From positions 62,001-126,000 of the IMG/VR virus record IMGVR_UViG_3300042515_001753: DNA of 64,000 nt; one strand, written 5' to 3'. Numbering within the stretch: position 1 is the stretch's first letter; each line of letters starts with the position of its first letter. The position numbers and the translations under genes are program-made. Under the pieces are notes generated by a model. The model ran no database searches. It worked only from the letters and a program-made list of their open reading frames with translations, and was not told the origin of the DNA. Below, one piece after another: positions 1,455 to 14,686 of the stretch.

Positions 1455-1708
1455 CAGGCAGTTAATTCAAGATACTTGTTAACGATTTCGGGAGTTGGTT
1501 CTGCGATTGTGAGAATACTATCAGAATGAATCATTAATTCGGTCTGATTAGTAACCTCGGGCCAGGGTTTCATATCATCCACACTAAAAAATTCATATGG
1601 ATTAATTAACTTACAATCAGGTTCACCAAGTTCGGATCCAATCTCAACAATTTCGGTAATTAAGATAGTATCAACCTTCAAGAGAAGACACTTCACATTC
1701 CTTTCCAT
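1454..1708 (-). CDS. conserved cyanophage hypothetical protein (possible Sm-like fold)
   Basis: 84 aa ORF; its stop overlaps the gp43 ATG (ATGA); usual position between hsp20 and gp43. Confidence 0.75.
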   Translation of the reverse strand: MERNVKCLLLKVDTILITEIVEIGSELGEPDCKLINPYEFFSVDDMKPWPEVTNQTELMIHSDSILTIAEPTPEIVNKYLELTA

Positions 1709-2006
1709 TTACTTTTTCCTCATACATTTGTTTGATAGCCTCTACTGGTTCAACAATTGTCACAACCCAATCTAGACGAACTGGAATCTCATTATCACTT
1801 GTAAAGAGAATCCAGGAAGAAAATGTTACACTAACTGTACCATCTTCTGGTTCTATTGGTTCTTCTGTTAAGAAGATTGAATTGCTGATCTTCATTTTAT
1901 GCGGATTCGTGAACAAATATCCACATACTTTATCTTCAGAAATCAACTCCTTAATATCGGCAATTACTGATTCTCCAGATTTTAATAGAGCAATTTTTAC
2001 AGACAT
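1671..2006 (-). CDS. conserved cyanophage hypothetical protein (possible Sm-like fold)
   Basis: Likely start MSVKIALLKSGE at 2006, after a GAGG SD and downstream of the 2028-2055 promoter; resembles the adjacent ORF. Confidence 0.75.
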   Translation of the reverse strand: MSVKIALLKSGESVIADIKELISEDKVCGYLFTNPHKMKISNSIFLTEEPIEPEDGTVSVTFSSWILFTSDNEIPVRLDWVVTIVEPVEAIKQMYEEKVNGKECEVSSLEG

Positions 2007-2027: not shown

Positions 2028-2055
2028 ATTATAGCATAAAAAAGGGAGGTGTCAA
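2028..2055 (-). promoter_or_regulatory. sigma70-type promoter TTGACA-N16-TATAAT with extended -10 (TGn)
   Basis: Minus strand reads TTGACA CCTCCCTTTTTTATGC TATAAT. Confidence 0.8.
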
Positions 2056-2078
2056 CTGGTTTTTGCCAGTTACCTCCC
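2038..2078 (-). terminator. intrinsic terminator after hsp20
   Basis: GGGAGGT-AACTGG-CAAAAA-CCAGTT-GAC-ACCTCCC followed by T6. Confidence 0.75.
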
Positions 2079-2102
2079 TGCGGCAACGATATTCAATTAT
2101 AT

Positions 2103-7210: not shown

Positions 7211-7654
7211 TCAGCGATTGAATTCAGTAAGTCCATTATCTTTACGAGTATAATGCCCATCAAAGTGGAGAAGTAGCATAGCATAGTGAATGACTTTCAT
7301 CAAGTCACGCTTATTGCGACCATCCTTGTCTCCATAACGAGAACCATATTTGAGGATGTTTGCCTGACAGAAACCTGCTGCTAGCTTCTTTGCTGCCATC
7401 AGGTCAATAGTCTGAATATCGGCATAACCATCACTATCACCACAATAATGCCCGTGATAGGTAGTGGTCACATAATCCTCAACATCTTTAAGGATTTTAT
7501 CTTCGTTGTATTTCCAAAGATGATTTGTTTTATCAGTCATAGTAACAGGAGTTTTTGTAACATTAAGTATGCCAGTCTCACCATTCATAGTGAGATTGAA
7601 TTTATTGATAAGATTTTGTTCGTCTTCAGGTCCAAACATAAGGGGAGAAGTCAT
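7211..7654 (-). CDS. DUF3310-like protein (T7 gp1.7 nucleotide kinase-related)
   Basis: HY...IQTIDL...GFCQANILKYGSRYGDKDG.NKRDLMKVIHY fits the DUF3310 pattern HY..IECID..GF..GNAIKY..R.GKK...EDL.KA..Y. Confidence 0.6.
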   Translation of the reverse strand: MTSPLMFGPEDEQNLINKFNLTMNGETGILNVTKTPVTMTDKTNHLWKYNEDKILKDVEDYVTTTYHGHYCGDSDGYADIQTIDLMAAKKLAAGFCQANILKYGSRYGDKDGRNKRDLMKVIHYAMLLLHFDGHYTRKDNGLTEFNR

Positions 7655-7675
7655 AATTAACCTCCCCCAATTATA

Positions 7676-8821
7676 TCAGAAAGGAAGGTCAATGTCAATC
7701 TCCCTACCACCCCCAATAGTCAGTTCAAGAGTTTCAGAAGGCATTACAAAATCAGCATCAATCTTATCATACAGTTCCAAGAAGGCAGTTTTGGTTTCAT
7801 CATCAAAACGATTGATACAAACCTGAATTGCCTTTGCCTTATCACCAAAGATGCTGTAGGCACGGACGATATGAACCAGTCGGCGGGTGGAGATGATTTC
7901 CTCAATACCACCATCATAGAAGGTCTTACGGATTACATCACCCCAATCTGCCAATCGCTTGCAGAAATCATCAATCTCGGTAAGACCCAGAGATGCTGCG
8001 ATGCCCTGAAGGATGCGAATCTCAGTAGCAGCAGCAGGATATGGTTGCTCAAAGGTCACGCAGAACCGCTCTAGGAACGCTTCGTTGAGCACGTTGGTGC
8101 CGATGAACCTACCGTCCTCAGAACCCTTTCCTTTGGTGTTTGCGGTGGCAATCACGTTGAATCCGGGAGCGGGTTTGACGAACCGTCCGATTTTTTTCAG
8201 GAAGACACCCTTACCTTCAAGAATAGATTGAAGGCACAGGATTTTATTGGAAGCAAGGTCAACCTCATCCAAAAGCAATACGGCACCACGCTCAAGTGCC
8301 TCAATCACGGGTCCGTTGTGCCAAGCAGTTTCACCATTCACAAGTCGGAAACCACCAATCAAATCATCCTCATCAGTCTCAATCGTAATATTCACACGAA
8401 TCAGTTCTCGCTTCAGTTGAGCACACGCTTGCTCCACACTGAACGTTTTACCATTACCCGAAAGACCCGTAATGAATGTAGGATAAAAAAGACGAGACTG
8501 AAGAATTTTTTTAACGTCAGCAAAACTACCAAACTTGACGAAGGTATCATCTTTATCGGGAATAAGGTTTTGGTGATGTTCGGGAAGAACTGCAACATTT
8601 TGGAAAGAACGCTCAATCTCTTCTACACGCTCTTGAGTCACTTCAAGGTTCCATTTGCCACGAGAAGTTTTGTATTGTGAGAGTTTATTACTTACGGTTT
8701 GGTAGTTGAGCGAACGAGAGGCACAGAAACCCCTGAGGTCGCCAGAAGTAATTTCAGTACCATAGAGTTCTTTGATTGCTTCAATTAGTTGGGCGTCATT
8801 CACGGCAGTTTTGCGGGACAT
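7676..8821 (-). CDS. cobS: CobS-like / MoxR-family AAA+ ATPase
   Basis: Walker A GLSGNGKT, Walker B LLLDEVD, ATANTKGKG, NEAFLERF, ISTRRL. Confidence 0.9.
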   Translation of the reverse strand: MSRKTAVNDAQLIEAIKELYGTEITSGDLRGFCASRSLNYQTVSNKLSQYKTSRGKWNLEVTQERVEEIERSFQNVAVLPEHHQNLIPDKDDTFVKFGSFADVKKILQSRLFYPTFITGLSGNGKTFSVEQACAQLKRELIRVNITIETDEDDLIGGFRLVNGETAWHNGPVIEALERGAVLLLDEVDLASNKILCLQSILEGKGVFLKKIGRFVKPAPGFNVIATANTKGKGSEDGRFIGTNVLNEAFLERFCVTFEQPYPAAATEIRILQGIAASLGLTEIDDFCKRLADWGDVIRKTFYDGGIEEIISTRRLVHIVRAYSIFGDKAKAIQVCINRFDDETKTAFLELYDKIDADFVMPSETLELTIGGGREIDIDLPF

Positions 8822-8854
8822 AATGTAGTTAGGTGGTTTTGTTTAACTGAAGTA

Positions 8855-8912
8855 ATTATACAACAAAAAAGAGGGTCGTGGGACCCCCTATGGACGGTTT
8901 TAAGATTGGACC
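8855..8912 (-). promoter_or_regulatory. early promoter cassette: dyad motif, terminator hairpin and -10 TATAAT upstream of cobS
   Basis: Plus strand TGGACGGTT-TTAA-GATTGGACC; TATAAT at 8855-8860; no consensus -35. Confidence 0.65.
8865..8888 (-). terminator. intrinsic terminator
   Basis: GGGGGTC-CCAC-GACCCTC followed by T6. Confidence 0.8.
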
Positions 8913-9094
8913 TGCTGGTTTCGCAGTTTATCTATGTACTCAAGACTCGCACAGTGACCCCTATAACCAGGATAATATTCATTCACCATAGCAGGAATAC
9001 CCATAGCAGTAATCGCACTGTCACACTTCACCCAAACTTCTTTGGTTTCGTGATTTACAACGTGTTCTAATCTCAATTTGTTAGTCTTCTTCAT
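8900..9094 (-). CDS. hypothetical protein (about 64 aa)
   Basis: Likely start MKKTNKLRLEHVVNHETKEVWVKCDS; overlaps the end of the upstream gene. Confidence 0.6.
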   Translation of the reverse strand: MKKTNKLRLEHVVNHETKEVWVKCDSAITAMGIPAMVNEYYPGYRGHCASLEYIDKLRNQQVQS

Positions 9095-9641
9095 AAGTAA
9101 ATGTTTTGTTTTTGACTTTTGTATCAAACTCACCAGTTCTTCCTGGTTTCATTTTTCCAACTCCAACATTCTTACCTTTACCAGGCCAAGATGTTTTGGA
9201 TGTTCCTTTCAGTGTAGCAGATCCTCCTGGTTTGCGTTGAATCAGAACGGAGTCCTGATCATCCTTTGATGACCCTGATTTTACATTCTTTTTGTGCTTA
9301 AGTCCAGCCTCTGTGCCCAGTTTCTCAACTGTCCTCTTAAAGATTTTCTTACCCATTTTACCAGAAGAAACTACGTGAGATTTTTCACCCACTTTTTTCT
9401 CATCTGGAGTTCCTGGGTTTTCAGTATATCTTCCGGATACTTTTGTTGGACCTGGAAGACCGGCACCTCTAATTCTTCTTTCGGTTCTTGAAGACCTTGC
9501 TTTGTTTTCTGCTTTTGATTTGTCACCTCGCTGCCCAGAAAGAATTGCCATTCCACCCTTTTCAGACTTACTCATTACGCGAGTAAGAGAAGTCTCTTGG
9601 ATAGAATAGCATTCTACCATAAATTCCTGAAAGGTCTTCAT
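9081..9641 (-). CDS. putative internal head protein with T4-type capsid targeting sequence; basic, Gly/Lys-rich
   Basis: Start MKTFQEFMVE (T4 CTS is MKTYQEFIAE); late promoter TAAATA at 9662-9667. Confidence 0.7.
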   Translation of the reverse strand: MKTFQEFMVECYSIQETSLTRVMSKSEKGGMAILSGQRGDKSKAENKARSSRTERRIRGAGLPGPTKVSGRYTENPGTPDEKKVGEKSHVVSSGKMGKKIFKRTVEKLGTEAGLKHKKNVKSGSSKDDQDSVLIQRKPGGSATLKGTSKTSWPGKGKNVGVGKMKPGRTGEFDTKVKNKTFTYEED

Positions 9642-9661
9642 TTTTATAAGCACTTTTTGAG

Positions 9662-9667
9662 TATTTA
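9662..9667 (-). promoter_or_regulatory. T4-type late promoter core TAAATA
   Basis: CTAAATAC about 20 nt upstream of the ATG at 9641. Confidence 0.6.
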
Positions 9668-9668
9668 G

Positions 9669-11840
9669 TTAAGCAACCAATTCAATAAACTCACCAAGAA
9701 TCTTCTTATTCATTTTTTTAGAACTCAAAGACTTGACAAAAGCAGATTTAATTTGTGCCTTTGAGGCATCTTCGGCAACCTTGAACTCACTATCACTATT
9801 GAGAGCAGAGGAAGAAATACCAAAGTAAGTATGATAACCAGAAGTAGTAAGGGCAAAACTGCGCTCTTTCTTCCAGCGTGTCATTACTTTGTGATATTCA
9901 TCTCCAATATATCCGGTATAATTCCGAATAAAATGCCCGGCATCACGACTATCAAGAATACGCATTCCAATAAAATTCACGCTGGGAAACTTGTCACGGA
10001 GATTTCTGAGAAGAAGGTCCGTAAAAGATGTATTGTTATTCCAAGTATTTTCAGAAAACTTATAAACATTTCCAGTCTTACGGTCACGAAGGTAGGAATT
10101 ATCTTGAATGTAATGAGTTCCTAGAAAACTTTCCTTTTCCCAGTGTCGTTTGATTTCCCGATAATACTTCAGAGGAGCTGCTTCACCATCAGTCAGAATT
10201 ACACACTGGACTTTCTGAAGTTTATGTTCTTTCTGAAAATGTGGAAGAATTTGATGTAAGGCAACAAGTGACTCATTCAGTGGAGTTCCGGAAAGAGTTA
10301 GTTTATGGGGAGCAGAATACTTACAATTACCATAATTGGAGCGGTCATACTGTTTGGCAACCCGATAGATATTCTTGAGTTGAGTATCAAGAACCGAACT
10401 TTTTACCTTGCTGGTAAATAGGTTCAGAAGACCAAATGTATAATCAACCACGAGTTCATTCTCTTTACGAACGGTATGTTCTTTAGGAGTGATTACTTTA
10501 CCATCGGCATCATATGAAGACCTATAGTTCCAATCATTTGTAAAGGCATAAACCTCAAAAGGAATATTAACCTTATTGCAGAACCAAATAAGATTATAAA
10601 GTTGCTTGACAGTATCCATAAGAACGCTACTCATAGACCCAGACCAGTCCAGAATAAAAACCAGACCGTGATTTTTACCGGTGGCAAATGTGGTTACTTT
10701 CTTGAACAAATCCTCCTGATACTTATAGGTATGAAGTTTCGTACAGTCCAGAACACCAGTCTTAGAAACTGATGCACGGGCATAGGAGTCTGCTGCCTTA
10801 CGACACTCAAACTCTTTCACTAGATAATTGACTTCCTTTTGTGCCGAACGCTTGAAATCTACATAATCGGCATCTACTGCGGTAAAGATTCCACTATCTT
10901 CGTGAATATAGATTTGATTATTCCAAGTTTCTTTACAATAATCGTGAATAATTTGATTAGAAATAATCGCAGAATCTAGATTCAATTTAGGAACTTCAAT
11001 ATAATTAGTTTCTTGAATGTTGTTATTCACTAGTTCCTTAAGGTTTTCCTCAAGAGAACTCATAGTCTTCACCTCCGGTTCAGAGTGTTCCCCACCAGTT
11101 TGTTGAGTATTTTGGTCCTCAAATTTTTCACCTTGAGTTTGTTGTTCAGACCCAGAGGTTTGTTGCTTATCGCCATCACCTTCACCATCCTCTTCGGGAG
11201 AAAGTTCTTGCTGTTCTTCAGATTGGTCTCCCGCACCAGAACCAGAAGACTTTTCGTGATTATCAAGACTGGGGAGTTTGGTAGGTTCTTCTTGCTTTTG
11301 CTTACAGTAATCATAAAGAACCTTGGCAGCATCCAGAGTTTCATCAAAGGTTTCTGCCTTACCAATCATATCAACAATTTCTTGCTCCTTATTGGTAAAT
11401 TCAAGAGTCAAGAAATTACCAACCTTGAAGTAAAGATTTGCACGGTCGGCAAGATTATGTGTTGAAAGGTCATCATCACCAATCTGAAAGAAATCTTCTT
11501 CCTGAAGTTCCCGATAGGCACCATAGAAGGTCTTTGCCAATCCGGCATAACGGCGTTTGATGAGTTTCTCTACACGAGCATCCTCACATACATTCACAAA
11601 CTGCTGAGGAACCTGAACTTGCTCACTCCAGTCCTCATCAGGCGTATAAAGTGAATGGGATACCTCGTGGGCAACCAACATATCATAGACACAATTACTT
11701 GCCTTCTGCCACATAGGAAGCGTCAGAACCCGTGTATGAACATTAAAGCAGGCAGTCTCAACCTTCTTGTGTTCCACAATCAGGTCTTCCGTTGCCAGAA
11801 GACGGGCGAGCATACCTTTTACTTCAAAATTTACGGTCAT
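9669..11840 (-). CDS. CobT-like vWA-domain protein with N-terminal HEXXH metallopeptidase
   Basis: AHEVSHSLYT (HEXXH), NVCEDARVE, acidic linker, MIDAS LDWSGSMS, LSGTPLNE and ILTDGE. Confidence 0.85.
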   Translation of the reverse strand: MTVNFEVKGMLARLLATEDLIVEHKKVETACFNVHTRVLTLPMWQKASNCVYDMLVAHEVSHSLYTPDEDWSEQVQVPQQFVNVCEDARVEKLIKRRYAGLAKTFYGAYRELQEEDFFQIGDDDLSTHNLADRANLYFKVGNFLTLEFTNKEQEIVDMIGKAETFDETLDAAKVLYDYCKQKQEEPTKLPSLDNHEKSSGSGAGDQSEEQQELSPEEDGEGDGDKQQTSGSEQQTQGEKFEDQNTQQTGGEHSEPEVKTMSSLEENLKELVNNNIQETNYIEVPKLNLDSAIISNQIIHDYCKETWNNQIYIHEDSGIFTAVDADYVDFKRSAQKEVNYLVKEFECRKAADSYARASVSKTGVLDCTKLHTYKYQEDLFKKVTTFATGKNHGLVFILDWSGSMSSVLMDTVKQLYNLIWFCNKVNIPFEVYAFTNDWNYRSSYDADGKVITPKEHTVRKENELVVDYTFGLLNLFTSKVKSSVLDTQLKNIYRVAKQYDRSNYGNCKYSAPHKLTLSGTPLNESLVALHQILPHFQKEHKLQKVQCVILTDGEAAPLKYYREIKRHWEKESFLGTHYIQDNSYLRDRKTGNVYKFSENTWNNNTSFTDLLLRNLRDKFPSVNFIGMRILDSRDAGHFIRNYTGYIGDEYHKVMTRWKKERSFALTTSGYHTYFGISSSALNSDSEFKVAEDASKAQIKSAFVKSLSSKKMNKKILGEFIELVA

Positions 11841-11865
11841 CGGAGTTCGTTTGTCTTATGAACCT

Positions 11866-11922
11866 ATTATACAAAAAAAGAGGGTCTTGAGGACCCTCTG
11901 TGTGCCAGTTTTGGAAGTGGTT
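11866..11922 (-). promoter_or_regulatory. early promoter cassette: dyad motif, terminator hairpin and -10 TATAAT upstream of the vWA gene
   Basis: Plus strand TGTGCCAGTT-TTGG-AAGTGG; TATAAT at 11866-11871; same spacing as the cobS cassette. Confidence 0.7.
11873..11898 (-). terminator. intrinsic terminator
   Basis: GAGGGTC-CTCAA-GACCCTC followed by T7. Confidence 0.85.
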
Positions 11923-11927
11923 TTTTA

Positions 11928-12482
11928 TTAGTTATGCTTTGGAGATTTGCCAATCTCATCAAATCTTTTTCTTTCAGTCTCTCTTGTAATGGCACTTACA
12001 ATTTTAGCAGACCTTTTCTTCTTTCCTTCATCACCAGTAGCAATTCCAGAGCGAGCAAGTTCCCCCGCCTTACGATACATTTTTGTTTGGGGAAGTTCTT
12101 TCTTCTCTTCGTCCAAAATACTCTGCTTCCACTCTTCACTCATATTTGCCATAATGACCAGAGCACTCTCATTAGTGTCGGCATAACCTTCGGAAACTAG
12201 GTGCTCAAGAATGGTGTCAAAAAGGTCTGTTTCCACTTCTTCAGGACGATATCCACCACTTGTTGCTGTTGGAGTTCCTCTTCCTTTACCAGCAGGAGCA
12301 ACAATCTTAGAAACTACTTTTCCAACGGGATTTGTTTTCATAAAATTAGCACCTTTCTCAAGAGCACCTTTTACAGCATCTTGAACATTCTCATCAAGTT
12401 CTTCTACTTCTTCTACAACTTCTTGAGGTTGATGAACCTGTAAATAAGCTTCATAAAGTTCTCTAACTTCTTGTTCTCTCAT
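11928..12482 (-). CDS. late hypothetical protein, probable head-packaged protein
   Basis: TATAAATA at 12502-12509 upstream; ELYEAYLQV N-terminus and DLFDTILEHLVSEGYADT..SALVIMANMSEEW module, both recurrent in cyanophage late proteins. Confidence 0.7.
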   Translation of the reverse strand: MREQEVRELYEAYLQVHQPQEVVEEVEELDENVQDAVKGALEKGANFMKTNPVGKVVSKIVAPAGKGRGTPTATSGGYRPEEVETDLFDTILEHLVSEGYADTNESALVIMANMSEEWKQSILDEEKKELPQTKMYRKAGELARSGIATGDEGKKKRSAKIVSAITRETERKRFDEIGKSPKHN

Positions 12483-12501
12483 TTTTCCAAAACTTTCTAA
12501 T

Positions 12502-12509
12502 TATTTATA
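12502..12509 (-). promoter_or_regulatory. late promoter TATAAATA
   Basis: Exact T4 late consensus. Confidence 0.75.
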
Positions 12510-12639
12510 AAAAAAAACACTCCGAAGAGTGCTTTTTCTTAAAGGCTTTGAGTCGTGCCTTTGCCTGTCGGAGTGCCTGCGGTTTGAGTCTCCGCTTCTG
12601 CTCCTTGCGTGAATGGTGTTGCCAGTTTGGAAGTTTCAT
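12505..12639 (-). CDS. small basic hypothetical peptide (44 aa)
   Basis: Not in the ORF track. MKLPNWQHHSRKEQKRRLKPQALRQAKARLKAFKKKHSSECFFL; own upstream promoter and a terminator inside its 3' end. Confidence 0.7.
   Translation of the reverse strand: MKLPNWQHHSRKEQKRRLKPQALRQAKARLKAFKKKHSSECFFL
12509..12531 (-). terminator. intrinsic terminator with UUCG loop
   Basis: CACTC-TTCG-GAGTG followed by T9. Confidence 0.85.
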
Positions 12640-12660
12640 TTTCCCTTTGCTTATGAGAAC

Positions 12661-12712
12661 ACAATACTATCTATAATCACGGAAGTCAAGAGGTCCAGTT
12701 GGGAAAGTGTCC
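12661..12712 (-). promoter_or_regulatory. sigma70-type promoter TTGACT-N17-TATTGT with upstream dyad motif
   Basis: -35 at 12684-12689, -10 at 12661-12666; plus strand GGTCCAGTT-GGGA-AAGTGTCC at 12692-12712. Confidence 0.6.
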
Positions 12713-14427
12713 TATACCTCACTTTTATATGAGAATCCATTTTTTTTCTCAAACTTAATCACACTATTAAATTTGTCCTCAAGTCCAGTCTTATGTGAAA
12801 TTACAAATACATTAGTATCCTTAATCACATAACGAATAATCTTAAGGAACTCATCAGTACCAAATCCATCAAGAGAACCATCAAACACCTCATCAAACAA
12901 AAGGATATTACAATTTGCAGAGTTCTTAACTCTTGCAATTTCTCTCCAAGCAAATACTAGAGCAAGATTAATTTTTGCCTTCTCACCCTCACTAAAAGAA
13001 CTATAAGAAAAGTTCTCGTGAATGGGTGACTTGATGCTCTCATTAAATTCTTCATCAAGATGGAAATTAATATAAAAATCCATCATCTGTAAGTAACGAT
13101 TCACCTGCTGATTTATGAACGGGAGATACTTTTTAATAATCTTCGTTTTTACACCATCATCCTTGAGTAAGGAATAGGCAAAATCATAATGAACGATTTC
13201 TTCTTTTTTATCCGAAAGGTCATCAAATGTTTTTTGAAGATTGTCTCTAAACTCTTCTAACTTCTCATTTTCAGTATTTCTATTTTTAAGTTGTTCGGTA
13301 ATAGTTTGAACTTCAGATTCAAGGTTTCGGATTTGTCTCTGACTGAGTGAAATCCGAGTATTGTTTTGAGAAATCTCATGGTTGAGTTTCGTAATCTCCT
13401 TTGATAGTGCTAGAAATTGACGCTCTCGTTCTTGTTCAAACTTCATAGTCTCCTCAAGTTCCTGAAAACCTTTCTGGAGTTCCTTTGCTTTATTTTGAGC
13501 GTCTGTAATTCTATTTAACCGAAACTCTTCCTCAATAGTTTGAGTACAAGTAGGGCATACCGTATTTTCACTAAAGAACTTGTGCTCTTTAGTAATCGTA
13601 GATACTTTCTGAGAGATTTTACCCTTAAGATTATTAAGTTTTCCTAACTTCTCTGCGGCACCAATAACTTCTTCTTGCTCTTTCGTATATTTGAAAATGT
13701 CTTCTTCGGTCTTGGCATTCTCGGTCATATAAGTACCAACTTCAGCATCTAAATCGGAAATTTTCCGTTTATTGGCATTTATATTGGCATTACCACGATT
13801 CTCAAGTTCCTCAATAAAACTCTTCTGCATTTCAACCTTGTCCTTAAGGTTTTGCTTCTTCAACTCAAGAGATTTTATTTCGTCCTTTTTAGTACGAATC
13901 TTTTCTTTGATAATAGTGTTCATCGTAGAGAATATCCGAATATCCAATAAGTCCTCAATTACCTCACGACGATTGGCAGTCGTAAGTTGCATAAAAGGCA
14001 CAAAGGTACTGGAACCCAGAATCACGATTTGGGTGAAAGATTTATAATTGACCTTTAGAATATTTTCTTCTAGTAATTTCTGATTAATACGGTCATCAGA
14101 TTCCTTATGAAGTTGTTTTCCATTTACTTCAATATCAAAGACATTTGGTTTGATTCCACGACGAACCAAATAATCACGACTATTGACAGAAAACTCAATC
14201 TCAACTAAACAATCCTTTTCGTTTGTTTGATTGATTAATTGAGGTTTGTTGATTTTGCGAAATGGTTTATTGAATAATACAAAAGTAAGAGCATCAAGTA
14301 CAGTTGATTTTCCTGCACCATTCGTTCCAATAATTAAGTTTGTATGATTCTTTTGGAAATCAATTTCTGTAAAATGCTGTCCGGTAGAAAGAAAGTTTTT
14401 CCATCGAATTTTTTTAAAGGTTATCAT
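12712..14427 (-). CDS. gp46: recombination endonuclease ATPase subunit (SbcC/Rad50-like)
   Basis: GTNGAGKST, coiled coils, zinc hook CPTC, FSEGEK signature, LLFDEVFDGSLD. Confidence 0.97.
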   Translation of the reverse strand: MITFKKIRWKNFLSTGQHFTEIDFQKNHTNLIIGTNGAGKSTVLDALTFVLFNKPFRKINKPQLINQTNEKDCLVEIEFSVNSRDYLVRRGIKPNVFDIEVNGKQLHKESDDRINQKLLEENILKVNYKSFTQIVILGSSTFVPFMQLTTANRREVIEDLLDIRIFSTMNTIIKEKIRTKKDEIKSLELKKQNLKDKVEMQKSFIEELENRGNANINANKRKISDLDAEVGTYMTENAKTEEDIFKYTKEQEEVIGAAEKLGKLNNLKGKISQKVSTITKEHKFFSENTVCPTCTQTIEEEFRLNRITDAQNKAKELQKGFQELEETMKFEQERERQFLALSKEITKLNHEISQNNTRISLSQRQIRNLESEVQTITEQLKNRNTENEKLEEFRDNLQKTFDDLSDKKEEIVHYDFAYSLLKDDGVKTKIIKKYLPFINQQVNRYLQMMDFYINFHLDEEFNESIKSPIHENFSYSSFSEGEKAKINLALVFAWREIARVKNSANCNILLFDEVFDGSLDGFGTDEFLKIIRYVIKDTNVFVISHKTGLEDKFNSVIKFEKKNGFSYKSEV

Positions 14428-14686
14428 TTTTAGGAGGAATTACAATATCATTAGTAGTAATTACGGCATACTTGTAGTTGTTATGCTTACAAGTCTTTAT
14501 GGCAAGTTCATCATCAACTTCCACGATTTCCATTTCTTTTTCGTAGTCTTCATCATACTCAAGCATCATAGCATACCGAGTGGCATCATCCTCTTCTTCA
14601 AATAAGAATAAAACCTTTTCTCCATATTGGTCTTGAACGGCATATGCCCCATCATCTTTACGACCCTTAAGAGTGAGAAGAAACAT
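14414..14686 (-). CDS. DUF3110-like hypothetical protein
   Basis: Likely start MFLLTLKG; VLFLFEEEDDATRYAMMLE resembles the cyanobacterial DUF3110 pattern VL.FE.EDDA.RYA.LLE. Confidence 0.55.
   Translation of the reverse strand: MFLLTLKGRKDDGAYAVQDQYGEKVLFLFEEEDDATRYAMMLEYDEDYEKEMEIVEVDDELAIKTCKHNNYKYAVITTNDIVIPPKNDNL

What the first reader, a model, noticed from the sequence alone, without database searches (positions are those of the whole stretch)
8855..12712. Repeated dyad operator at fixed distance from -35-less early promoters
Seen on the plus strand: TGGACGGTT-N4-GATTGGACC (8891-8912), TGTGCCAGTT-N4-AAGTGG (11901-11920), GGTCCAGTT-N4-AAGTGTCC (12692-12712) and a half-site TGCCAGTT (2064-2071). 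The GTT end lies 39, 39, 34 and 38 nt from the -10 hexamer. The cobS and vWA promoters have a perfect TATAAT but no -35, and a terminator hairpin occupies the gap. Inference: a binding site for a dimeric activator or repressor, host or phage, that defines an early regulon. From memory, similar motifs have been noted upstream of early genes in marine T4-like cyanophages; the binding protein is not known to me.
Basis: partly seen in the sequence, partly recalled or inferred. Interest (0 to 1): 0.6.

Follow-up and report, generated by a model that had tools for sequence, protein, structure and literature searches.

The report
Cyanophage early-promoter palindrome shared with host

Summary
The four sites exist at the stated coordinates and distances. 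Inside the window the motif alone is no more frequent than chance. The sites score 8, 12, 11 and 11 of 16 against the full element.

The full element is the 24-bp palindrome TGTG[A/C]CA[C/G]TT-N4-AA[C/G]TG[G/T]CACA.
- The phage contig holds 12 copies against 0 for a reversed control, all outside the window.
- Syn9, S-PM2 and P-SSM2 hold 7 to 13 each. At least 120 IMG/VR stretches hold exact copies.
- Microcystis siphophage Mic1 holds 47, all in its RNA-seq-defined early region.

The geometry is rigid: palindrome, 7 nt, a -35-like TTG, 16-17 nt, the -10.

It is not an RNA hairpin, because its variable positions avoid complementarity.

In cyanobacterial genomes the same palindrome lies 38-41 nt upstream of Cyano-1/Yfr2 sRNA genes. 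A palindromic element at that position in Prochlorococcus yfr2 promoters is published as the site of the activator PMM1637, a GntR/PlmA-family protein found in all cyanobacteria. None of the three phages searched for one (this contig, Syn9, Mic1) encodes a GntR domain.

Best reading: a host-factor operator, probably for PlmA, borrowed by phage early promoters. Binding is untested. The element is probably the one reported for Syn9 in 2016, a paper I could not read. I found no paper that links it to the host yfr2 promoter.

The parts
11901..11924 (-).
   Evidence: Ends 29 nt before the -10. Syn9 has a syntenic site at 127492-127515.
11872..11899 (-). Intrinsic terminator of the upstream 184-aa gene (8-bp stem, 5-nt loop, T-run). 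It occupies the spacer where the -35 would lie.
   Evidence: stem 11899-11879
11866..11871 (-). -10 hexamer TATAAT. The predicted start is near 11859-11860, which is 40 nt from the end of the palindrome, as at host Cyano-1 genes.
   Evidence: inference from geometry; no TSS data
9669..11840 (-). 723-aa gene served by this promoter. No Pfam hit. It aligns to genes annotated 'peptidase' and is syntenic with Syn9 gp150.
   Evidence: (hit H9)
8889..8912 (-). The proximal half AACCGTCCAT resembles the variant AAC(C/T)GTCCAC seen at contig 8079 and 16378.
   Evidence: Register is 28 nt to the -10. Syn9 cobS has the same layout upstream.
8864..8889 (-). Intrinsic terminator (8-bp stem, 4-nt loop, T-run) in the promoter spacer
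   Evidence: stem 8889-8870
8855..8860 (-). -10 hexamer TATAAT of the cobS promoter, with no -35 match
7676..8821 (-). cobS-type AAA+ (MoxR-like) ATPase gene
   Evidence: AAA_5, 4e-18
12691..12714 (-). It abuts a -35 with a 1-nt gap instead of 7.
   Evidence: The same 1-nt-gap form occurs at contig 106547 and 114973. It is not a general class in IMG/VR.
12661..12689 (-). Sigma-70-type promoter TTGACT-17-TATTGT
12505..12639 (-). 44-aa highly basic ORF downstream of that promoter
   Evidence: mechanical ORF; not otherwise tested
2062..2085 (-). It lies inside the stem of a long hairpin.
2028..2055 (-). Perfect sigma-70-type promoter TTGACA-16-TATAAT, 6 nt downstream of the remnant
1671..2006 (-). 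DUF6561 gene served by this promoter

Best explanation
The four sites are worn copies of a conserved 24-bp palindromic operator, TGTG[A/C]CA[C/G]TT-N4-AA[C/G]TG[G/T]CACA. It forms the upstream part of the early-class promoters of T4-like cyanophages (Kyanoviridae).

The operator ends 7 nt before a -35-like TTG and 29-30 nt before the -10. That places it at about -64 to -41, centred near -53. Host RNA polymerase with its main sigma factor reads the core promoter.

The palindrome is most likely bound by a dimeric host protein that is already in the cell when the DNA enters. That protein would recruit or stabilise the polymerase. This would let even promoters whose -35 has been replaced by the upstream gene's terminator hairpin (cobS and the 723-aa gene) fire.

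The best candidate is the cyanobacteria-specific GntR-family regulator PlmA/PMM1637, the published activator of the host yfr2 sRNA promoters.

Shown here:
- the element is real and conserved;
- its geometry is rigid;
- it sits at early genes in Mic1;
- it sits at host Cyano-1/Yfr2 promoters at the same distance;
- the three phages searched for one (this contig, Syn9, Mic1) encode no GntR protein.

Inferred:
- that it acts as an activator site in phages;
- that PlmA is the protein;
- that the worn window copies still work.
For: **Reality and conservation.**
- Own contig: 12 sites against 0 for the control.
- Syn9: 7 against 0. S-PM2: 13 against 0. P-SSM2: 13 against 0.

**Geometry.** Over 380 unselected flanks, TTG starts at +7 in 125 (background about 6). 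TAnnnT starts at +29 or +30 in 100 and 83 (background about 8).

**Protein site, not RNA.** The half-sites differ at position 8 far more often than independence predicts, 84 against 51 expected, so the pair is anti-complementary.

**Early class.**
- Downstream genes are Kyano_Gp96, ArdA-like anti-restriction, DUF6267 and small ORFans.
- On the own contig each small gene at 11-17 kb has its own copy.
- Mic1 has 47 sites, all at 57.3-72.1 kb. In the proximal copies examined (gp68-71, gp73) the layout is the same 7-nt gap, then TAGACA/TGGACA-17-CATAAT. These lie in front of genes gp69-73, which peak at 0.5 h in RNA-seq (PMC11237433).

**Host link.**
- 301 cyanobacterial genomes give about 55 sites with up to 1 mismatch, about 11 of them perfect, where about 0.3 perfect sites are expected. 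The reversed control gives about 22.
- Seven of the fetched sites lie 38-40 nt upstream of Rfam Cyano-1.
- In a sample of 39 Cyano-1 genes chosen without regard to the motif, 17 have at least 12/16 upstream, 13 of them at a gap of 38-41 nt, where about 0.01 is expected.
- Marine Synechococcus yfr2 promoters carry the distal half-site at the same place in 10 of 14.

**Published work (PMC6191309).**
- A palindromic element starting 55-57 nt upstream of the yfr2 start binds PMM1637 in pull-down and EMSA.
- PMM1637 raises promoter output in a reporter assay.
- Its homologues occur in all cyanobacteria and only there.
- In the phage layout the GTT of the distal half falls at -57.

**Where the protein is encoded.**
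- No GntR domain is found in the own contig, Syn9 or Mic1. There is one strong ~330-aa GntR in each of the two hosts tested, WH7803 and G082.
- Their winged-helix domains look about 80% identical by eye, against 42% overall.
Against: - No binding or transcription-start data exist for this phage. RNA runs gave only contigs.
- The published picocyanobacterial element (CGRE1) is described as GTT(G/A) and its inverted repeat separated by 13-14 nt. The phage palindrome has 4 nt between them. So the two are related by position and half-site, not identical, and I could not see the published logo.
- The authors say CGRE1 is restricted to marine picocyanobacteria.
- Five complete marine Synechococcus genomes contain no copy of the phage-type palindrome. 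These are hosts of phages that do carry it, so the factor would have to accept both arrangements.
- The distance to the -35 is not invariant. Mic1 also uses 16 nt, and three sites on the own contig use 1 nt.
- T7-like cyanopodoviruses and Ma-LMM01 lack the element although they infect the same kinds of host.
- The window copies are worn enough that they may no longer bind anything.
- Mic1's immediate-early gene gp49 has no copy nearby.
Confidence: 0.55

Rival explanations
1. The palindrome is the operator of a phage-encoded regulator, for example a small early helix-turn-helix protein. That protein shuts early promoters off after the first minutes by negative feedback, or it is an injected virion protein that turns them on. 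The copies at host yfr2 genes would then be targets that the phage protein also hits.
For: - The Mic1 immediate-early set includes an HTH protein (gp73) flanked by operator arrays. These transcripts peak at 0.5 h and then fall quickly (PMC11237433).
- A Mic1-like contig encodes a protein next to an array whose relatives are annotated XRE-like.
- Tandem arrays of up to 7 operators resemble cooperative repressor sites.
- The phage-type palindrome is absent from marine Synechococcus genomes.
Against: - BLAST finds no protein shared between the 16 Mic1 early-region proteins tested and the Kyanoviridae sequences that carry the same operator.
- The position, upstream of the -35 with a rigid 7-nt gap, is typical of activation rather than occlusion.
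- The same element at the same distance upstream of host sRNA genes in uninfected genomes calls for a host protein.
- The Syn9 protein annotated 'transcriptional regulator' (gp230) has no DNA-binding domain hit, and its only match in this contig is weak (28 residues, E 0.06).
Confidence: 0.22
2. The element is mainly a recombination module. It would be the conserved part of mobile promoter-terminator cassettes, like the PeSLs of other T4-like phages, which shuffle early genes by homologous recombination. Its conservation would reflect spread of the cassette rather than protein binding.
For: - Whole cassettes (palindrome, spacer, -10 and leader) are repeated almost identically before successive small ORFs at contig 11.3, 12.0 and 12.5 kb and at 16.6 and 16.9 kb.
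- Composite terminator/promoter units flank variable genes, as described for PeSLs (PMC4122927).
Against: - Across IMG/VR the spacers and flanks differ freely, while 16 palindrome positions and the 7-nt register are kept. That is selection on a binding site, not on homology length.
- The element occurs at chromosomal host sRNA promoters.
- The two roles are not exclusive.
Confidence: 0.1
3. Within this window the motif is a chance resemblance or an RNA-level hairpin at the 3' end of the upstream transcripts. It has no role of its own.
For: - Window-only statistics are at chance level.
- Site 1 matches only 8 of 16.
- All four sites lie just downstream of the upstream gene's stop codon, in its 3' UTR.
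Against: - The register to the -10 (28-29 nt) is kept at three of the four sites.
- The layout is conserved in Syn9 at the syntenic cobS and gp150 genes.
- Site 2 has a perfect proximal half-site.
- The variable positions of the family are anti-complementary, which argues against a hairpin.
Confidence: 0.08

Closest known systems
'Novel regulatory element' of early-gene promoters in cyanophage Syn9 and other T4-like cyanophages (Doron et al. 2016, ISME J 10:1437; recalled from memory, paper not held)
   Same: A conserved non-sigma-70 element upstream of early genes of T4-like cyanophages, abundant in genomes and metagenomes. Syn9 carries the palindrome in its block of small genes at 44-53 kb and before gp150 and gp183.
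   Different: I could not read the paper, so I have not checked that their logo is this palindrome. As far as I recall, no binding factor was named there.
CGRE1, the PMM1637 (GntR/PlmA family) responsive element of yfr2 sRNA promoters in Prochlorococcus and marine Synechococcus (Lambrecht et al. 2018, PMC6191309)
   Same: Palindromic, about 22 bp, starts at -55 to -57 with GTT(G/A), lies upstream of a sigma-70-type promoter and acts positively. The phage palindrome puts its GTT at -57. The phage-type palindrome itself lies upstream of Cyano-1/Yfr2 genes in many other cyanobacteria.
   Different: CGRE1 is described with 13-14 nt between GTT(G/A) and its inverted repeat; the phage element has 4 nt. 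The authors report CGRE1 only in picocyanobacteria and nowhere else in the MED4 genome (PMC6778093). They make no link to phages.
PeSL (promoter-early stem-loop) cassettes of T4-like phages (Arbiol 2010; Comeau 2014, PMC4122927)
   Same: Small composite terminator-plus-early-promoter units between variable early genes. The cobS and 723-aa-gene promoters here are such composites.
   Different: PeSLs are defined by a stem-loop plus a sigma-70 promoter. They have no 24-bp protein-type palindrome. Here the hairpin is optional and lies inside the promoter spacer.
Activator-dependent phage promoters that lack a -35: T4 middle promoters (MotA box with AsiA) and phi29 A3 (protein p4 bound upstream)
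   Same: A -10 element, plus a specific upstream site that stands in for a poor or missing -35.
   Different: Those activators are phage-encoded and act after the early phase. Cyanophages lack MotA and AsiA (PMC5780444). Here the promoters are early-class and the factor is probably host-encoded.
GntR-family operators (GT-Nx-AC palindromes; Rigali et al. 2002, from general knowledge)
   Same: The inner core GTT-N4-AAC fits the family pattern. The 2018 paper itself notes that Rhodobacter CceR uses this repeat with a 4-nt spacing.
   Different: The outer TGTG/CACA arms lengthen the site to 24 bp.

Membership tests
Cyanophage (Kyanoviridae) early-promoter upstream element | Conserved among T4-like cyanophages and enriched over chance | tested here: met
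   Own contig 12 against 0; Syn9 7 against 0; S-PM2 13 against 0; P-SSM2 13 against 0; at least 120 IMG/VR stretches
Cyanophage (Kyanoviridae) early-promoter upstream element | Fixed position relative to the core promoter | tested here: met
   TTG at +7 in 125 of 380 flanks; -10 at +29 or +30 in 183 of 380. Window sites lie 28-29 nt from the -10, except site 3 at 24 nt.
Cyanophage (Kyanoviridae) early-promoter upstream element | Lies upstream of experimentally early transcription starts | tested here: inconclusive
   No TSS or time-course data for this phage. Met indirectly in Mic1 through published RNA-seq classes.
Cyanophage (Kyanoviridae) early-promoter upstream element | Sequence identical to the published Syn9 logo | not testable with these tools
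   Doron et al. 2016 is not held
Cyanophage (Kyanoviridae) early-promoter upstream element | The window copies match the full consensus | tested here: not met
   8, 12, 11 and 11 of 16. No window site has 3 or fewer mismatches. They are worn members.
CGRE1 / PlmA (PMM1637) operator | Starts 55-57 nt upstream of the start site with GTT(G/A) | tested here: met
   At host genes the palindrome ends 40 nt before Cyano-1 position 1, which puts its GTT at -57. Phage -10 boxes sit in the matching register. The phage start sites are predicted, not measured.
CGRE1 / PlmA (PMM1637) operator | Located in yfr2-family sRNA promoters | tested here: met
   Among host copies of the phage-type palindrome, 7 fetched sites lie next to Cyano-1. 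13 of 39 unselected Cyano-1 genes have at least 12/16 at a gap of 38-41 nt.
CGRE1 / PlmA (PMM1637) operator | Inverted repeat GTT(G/A)...(C/T)AAC separated by 13-14 nt | tested here: not met
   The phage element has GTT-N4-AAC. An everted form with 13 nt between CAAC and GTTG occurs near the -35 in 5 of 14 marine Synechococcus yfr2 promoters.
CGRE1 / PlmA (PMM1637) operator | Bound by the GntR-family protein | not testable with these tools
   Needs EMSA, pull-down or ChIP. Indirect evidence only: no GntR in the phages searched, one PlmA-like GntR per host tested, and a conserved wHTH.
PeSL cassette | Stem-loop terminator fused to an early sigma-70-type promoter between variable genes | tested here: met
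   Hairpins at 11899-11879, 8889-8870 and around 2044-2080, next to a TATAAT
PeSL cassette | Mediates recombination or indels between related genomes | not tested
   No close pair of genomes was compared
RNA hairpin / structured 3' UTR element | Compensatory changes keep the pairing | tested here: not met
   At positions 8/17 the non-pairing combinations dominate (84 against 24 pairing), and the commonest form has two mismatches. No Rfam family is found in the window or in the early region.

The most novel reading that the evidence does not exclude
Early promoters of two unrelated cyanophage lineages (T4-like Kyanoviridae and Mic1-like siphophages) copy the operator of the host's yfr2 sRNA promoter. 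They are switched on by the host's PlmA-family GntR regulator.

In Prochlorococcus the PlmA homologue induces Yfr2 under high light and nitrogen stress, and in Synechococcus elongatus PlmA binds the PII-PipX nitrogen-signalling complex. The first wave of phage transcription would therefore be tied to the host's light and nitrogen state.

The dozens of operator copies, 47 in Mic1, could also soak up PlmA and blunt the host's Yfr2 response.
Probability: 0.45. Interest if true: 0.8.

Novelty: new member of a known kind. Interest (0 to 1): 0.65.

Why it matters
T4-like cyanophages lack the T4 proteins that reprogram the host polymerase. As far as I know, which factor reads their distinctive early promoters is still unnamed.

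The same 24-bp element sits at the same distance upstream of the host's conserved Yfr2 sRNA genes, where a cyanobacteria-specific GntR activator is already known to act. That turns the question into a simple binding and knock-down experiment.

If the link holds:
- it would explain how unrelated cyanophages start infection using only host proteins;
- it could explain why infection tracks host light and nutrient status;
- it would give a one-line sequence rule for finding early genes in cyanophage genomes and metagenomes.

If it fails, the palindrome still serves as a practical marker of early-type promoters in Kyanoviridae.

Tried and rejected
- **Literature.** Doron et al. 2016 could not be opened by DOI or PMC id. 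Ten full-text searches found no description of the Syn9 motif and no paper that links CGRE1 or PlmA with cyanophages. The library lacks most subscription journals, so this does not prove novelty.
- **RNA evidence.** Runs holding the stretch are lake-water metagenomes plus five metatranscriptomes, all kept as contigs. Laying four of them on window 7500-13000 (5,501 letters, within the operators' limit) showed transcribed relatives but no starts or ends.
- **Host operator in marine Synechococcus.** None with up to 2 mismatches, and no excess with up to 3, in five complete genomes. This first pointed away from a host factor, until the phylum-wide scan.
- **Phage-encoded binder.**
  - Kyano_Gp96, the commonest downstream gene, gave a confident model (pLDDT 93.7) with no PDB match by sequence, Foldseek or VIA; the best Z was 4.0. 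There is no sign of a DNA-binding fold.
  - Syn9 gp230 'transcriptional regulator', gp22 and gp162 have no Pfam hit. The only match in this contig is a weak one for gp230 (28 residues, E 0.06).
  - The Mic1 early-region proteins tested and the XRE-like ORF of L046 have no BLAST relative in the Kyanoviridae sequences.
- **Other rejected leads.**
  - The first PWM, built from the 5' half-degenerate copies, under-called the palindrome.
  - A loose scan for a -10 plus initiator pattern was too permissive to use.
  - T7-like cyanopodoviruses P-SSP7 and Syn5 and the Microcystis myovirus Ma-LMM01 carry no copy.
  - A sigma-54-like reading of TGGCAC was dropped. I recall that cyanobacteria lack sigma-54, and the element is palindromic and lies at about -53.

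Full report
**What the window is.** The window is the reverse complement of bases 19988-83987 of a 146-kb linear viral contig with 36.7% G+C. CheckV estimates the contig at about 68% complete. It is a T4-like cyanomyovirus.
- Megablast finds only Synechococcus myophages such as S-SRM01 and S-SKS1.
- It carries psbA, cobS, hsp20 and homologues of T4 gp46 and gp47.
- Runs holding 41-100% of the sampled words of this DNA are lake-water or unspecified metagenomes.

**Check of the observation.**
- Terminator hairpins occupy the spacer upstream of cobS (stem 8889-8870) and of the 723-aa gene (stem 11899-11879). Neither promoter has a -35.
- The other two promoters do have -35 boxes: TTGACT-17-TATTGT at 12689-12661, and a perfect TTGACA-16-TATAAT at 2055-2028.
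- Inside the window the motif is not enriched. The inner core occurs 5 times against 3.3 expected. Sites with at least 11 of 16 matches number 37 against 35 expected.

**The full element.** I scanned the whole contig with a matrix built from the clearest copies.
- It is a 24-bp palindrome, TGTG[A/C]CA[C/G]TT-N4-AA[C/G]TG[G/T]CACA.
- The contig has 12 sites with up to 3 mismatches, against none for the reversed control.
- Ten lie between 11.0 and 16.9 kb of the contig, outside the window.
- There, each small ORF of 38-300 aa has its own copy, followed 28-30 nt later by a TATAAT-like -10 and a conserved TCATAC leader.
- This block is also richer in G+C, reaching 47-52% at 14-20 kb.

**Conservation elsewhere.**
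- Syn9 has 7 sites against 0 for the control. S-PM2 and P-SSM2 have 13 against 0 each.
- The genes most often found downstream of these copies are Kyano_Gp96 (a Kyanoviridae family), an ArdA-like anti-restriction protein, DUF6267 and small acidic ORFans, which is early or take-over gene content.
- Syn9 shows the same worn element, a 28-nt spacer and TATAAT upstream of its cobS (with a hairpin in the spacer, as here) and of its gp150 'peptidase' gene, which is syntenic with the 723-aa gene here.

**Anatomy.**
- Over 380 flanks taken without regard to orientation, TTG begins exactly 7 nt after the palindrome in 125 (background about 6). TAnnnT begins at +29 or +30 in 183 (background about 8 per position).
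- The usual unit is therefore palindrome, 7 nt (often G/C-rich), a -35-like hexamer, 16-17 nt, then the -10. This puts the palindrome at about -64 to -41.
- The -35-less form with a terminator in the spacer is a minority variant.
- The two free positions inside each half vary. At position 8 the two halves differ much more often than independence predicts (84 against 51 expected). The commonest form therefore cannot pair, which rules out a hairpin or cruciform and points to a protein site.
- Rfam finds nothing in the window or in the early block.

**A second phage family.**
- Some IMG/VR contigs carry tandem arrays of the palindrome with a 58-bp period. These contigs are relatives of the Microcystis siphophage Mic1.
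- Mic1 itself has 47 copies with up to 2 mismatches against 0 for the control, all between 57.3 and 72.1 kb.
- The copies nearest to gp68-71 and gp73 show the same layout: a 7-nt gap, then TAGACA or TGGACA, 17 nt, then CATAAT. A second set (gp59, 62, 64, 66) has a 16-nt gap before TTGACA.
- The published Mic1 RNA-seq time course places gp69-73 in the immediate-early cluster that peaks at 0.5 h. It places gp52, gp59 and gp63 in the second early cluster (PMC11237433).
- This is independent experimental support that the palindrome marks early promoters.
- BLAST finds no protein shared between the 16 Mic1 early-region proteins tested and the Kyanoviridae sequences.

**The host link.**
- Five complete marine Synechococcus genomes contain no copy.
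- A sample of 301 cyanobacterial genomes contains about 55 sites with up to 1 mismatch. About 11 are perfect, where about 0.3 is expected. The reversed control gives about 22.
- Of 26 such sites fetched, seven lie 38-40 nt upstream of the 5' end of the Rfam Cyano-1 RNA, the Yfr2 sRNA family as I recall it.
- Going the other way, I took 39 Cyano-1 genes chosen without regard to the motif. Seventeen have at least 12 of 16 matches upstream, 13 of them at a gap of 38-41 nt, where about 0.01 is expected.
- In marine Synechococcus, 10 of 14 yfr2 promoters keep the distal half-site at the same place. Five carry an everted arrangement of the same half-sites near the -35.

**Published regulator.** Lambrecht et al. 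2018 (PMC6191309) found a palindromic 21-22-nt element, CGRE1, starting 55-57 nt upstream of the yfr2 start in Prochlorococcus and marine Synechococcus.
- With it they pulled down the GntR-family protein PMM1637, a PlmA homologue.
- They confirmed binding by EMSA, with an R50A control.
- They showed a positive effect on the promoter in a GFP reporter.
- PMM1637 homologues occur in all cyanobacteria and only there.
- In the phage geometry the GTT of the distal half-site falls at -57, which matches the published start of CGRE1.
- None of the three phages searched for one (this contig, Syn9, Mic1) encodes a GntR domain. WH7803 and a distant cyanobacterium (G082) whose Cyano-1 promoter has a perfect palindrome each encode one strong PlmA-like GntR.
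- Those two proteins are 42% identical overall; by eye the winged-helix part is about 80% identical.

**Best explanation.** The palindrome is an operator for a host protein that is already in the cell. That protein is most likely PlmA, and phage early promoters have borrowed the operator from the yfr2 promoter to get immediate transcription by host polymerase.

This accounts for:
- the rigid geometry;
- the tolerance of missing -35 boxes;
- the early class;
- its presence in two unrelated cyanophage lineages with different hosts.

Weak points:
- no binding data exist for phage sites;
- CGRE1 as described has 13-14 nt, not 4, between its GTT repeats, so the two are not the same sequence;
- hosts of Syn9-type phages lack the phage-type arrangement;
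- spacing variants exist (1 nt and 16 nt);
- podoviruses and Ma-LMM01 do without the element.

Rivals are a phage-encoded early repressor or an injected activator, a PeSL-like recombination cassette, and, for the worn window copies only, chance.

**Novelty.** From memory, Doron et al. 2016 reported a novel regulatory element at Syn9 early genes that is conserved in T4-like cyanophages. I could not open the paper. The phage element is therefore probably already known, and this contig is a further member.

In the library I could search, I found no statement of:
- the palindrome's identity with the upstream element of host Yfr2 genes;
- its presence in Mic1-type siphophages;
- PlmA as the implied factor.

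That library omits most subscription journals.

Noticed in passing
window 12502-12509 (-), with hairpin about 12514-12533: TATAAATA, the T4-type late-promoter box, lies 20 nt upstream of the ATG of the 184-aa gene (11928-12482, minus strand), directly after a terminator hairpin. This gene sits between two early-type promoters but looks late-driven.
   Followed up: no
window 12505-12639 (-): A 44-aa, very basic ORF follows the site-3 promoter. Its first codons contain a look-alike of the motif (12617-12640) with 3-nt instead of 4-nt spacing, probably by chance.
   Followed up: partly
window 9318-9331: A perfect inner core (CAGTT-N4-AACTG) lies inside the SAM-lyase-like ORF 9081-9653(-), with TAAAAT 29 nt downstream in gene sense. 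This may be an internal promoter for the small ORF 8900-9133(-).
   Followed up: no
own contig 14-20 kb (outside the window; would be window coordinates about 64000-70000): The block with the best palindromes has 47-52% G+C against 36.7% for the contig, which suggests a different origin or different constraints for these early genes.
   Followed up: no
own contig 14235-14570 (locus L204:1501-1836): The Kyano_Gp96 (PF23790) homologue is flanked by two palindromes. The AlphaFold model is confident (pLDDT 93.7) and made of two alpha-plus-beta-sheet repeats. No solved structure matches it: Foldseek E is at best 0.2 and the best VIA Z is 4.0.
   Followed up: partly
Mic1 (MN013189) 65.9-72.1 kb; loci L041, L046, L090: Tandem arrays hold up to seven palindrome-plus-TTGACA units with a 58-bp period. 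Most units point away from the nearest gene. Whether they are stacked promoters, cooperative sites or a sink for the binding protein is open.
   Followed up: partly
marine Synechococcus loci L237, L240, L241, L243, L244: yfr2 promoters carry an everted arrangement of the same half-sites (AACTGGCAC-A-GTGCCAGTT) close to the -35, sometimes together with a distal half-site at about -60. With its flanking C and G (intact in 2 of the 5 copies) it gives CAAC-N13-GTTG, so it may be the low-light form of CGRE1.
   Followed up: partly
cyanobacterial loci L221-L224 (G091, G109, G241, G245) and two more genomes: A near-identical palindrome (TGTACCAGTTTTGCAAGTGGCACA) recurs in six genomes downstream of a 604-aa ORF, and is not next to Cyano-1. 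It may be another conserved target of the same factor.
   Followed up: no
own contig 134295-135343 (outside the window): The psbA match is split and has two in-frame TAG codons inside the Pfam alignment. This could be an intron, an inserted endonuclease or a broken copy.
   Followed up: no
window 7670-7698 (-): A perfect TTGACA-17-TATAAT with an upstream TG lies inside the 3' end of cobS, ahead of the next gene (7211-7654), with no palindrome upstream. It looks like a plain host-type promoter and makes a useful contrast to the palindrome class.
   Followed up: partly
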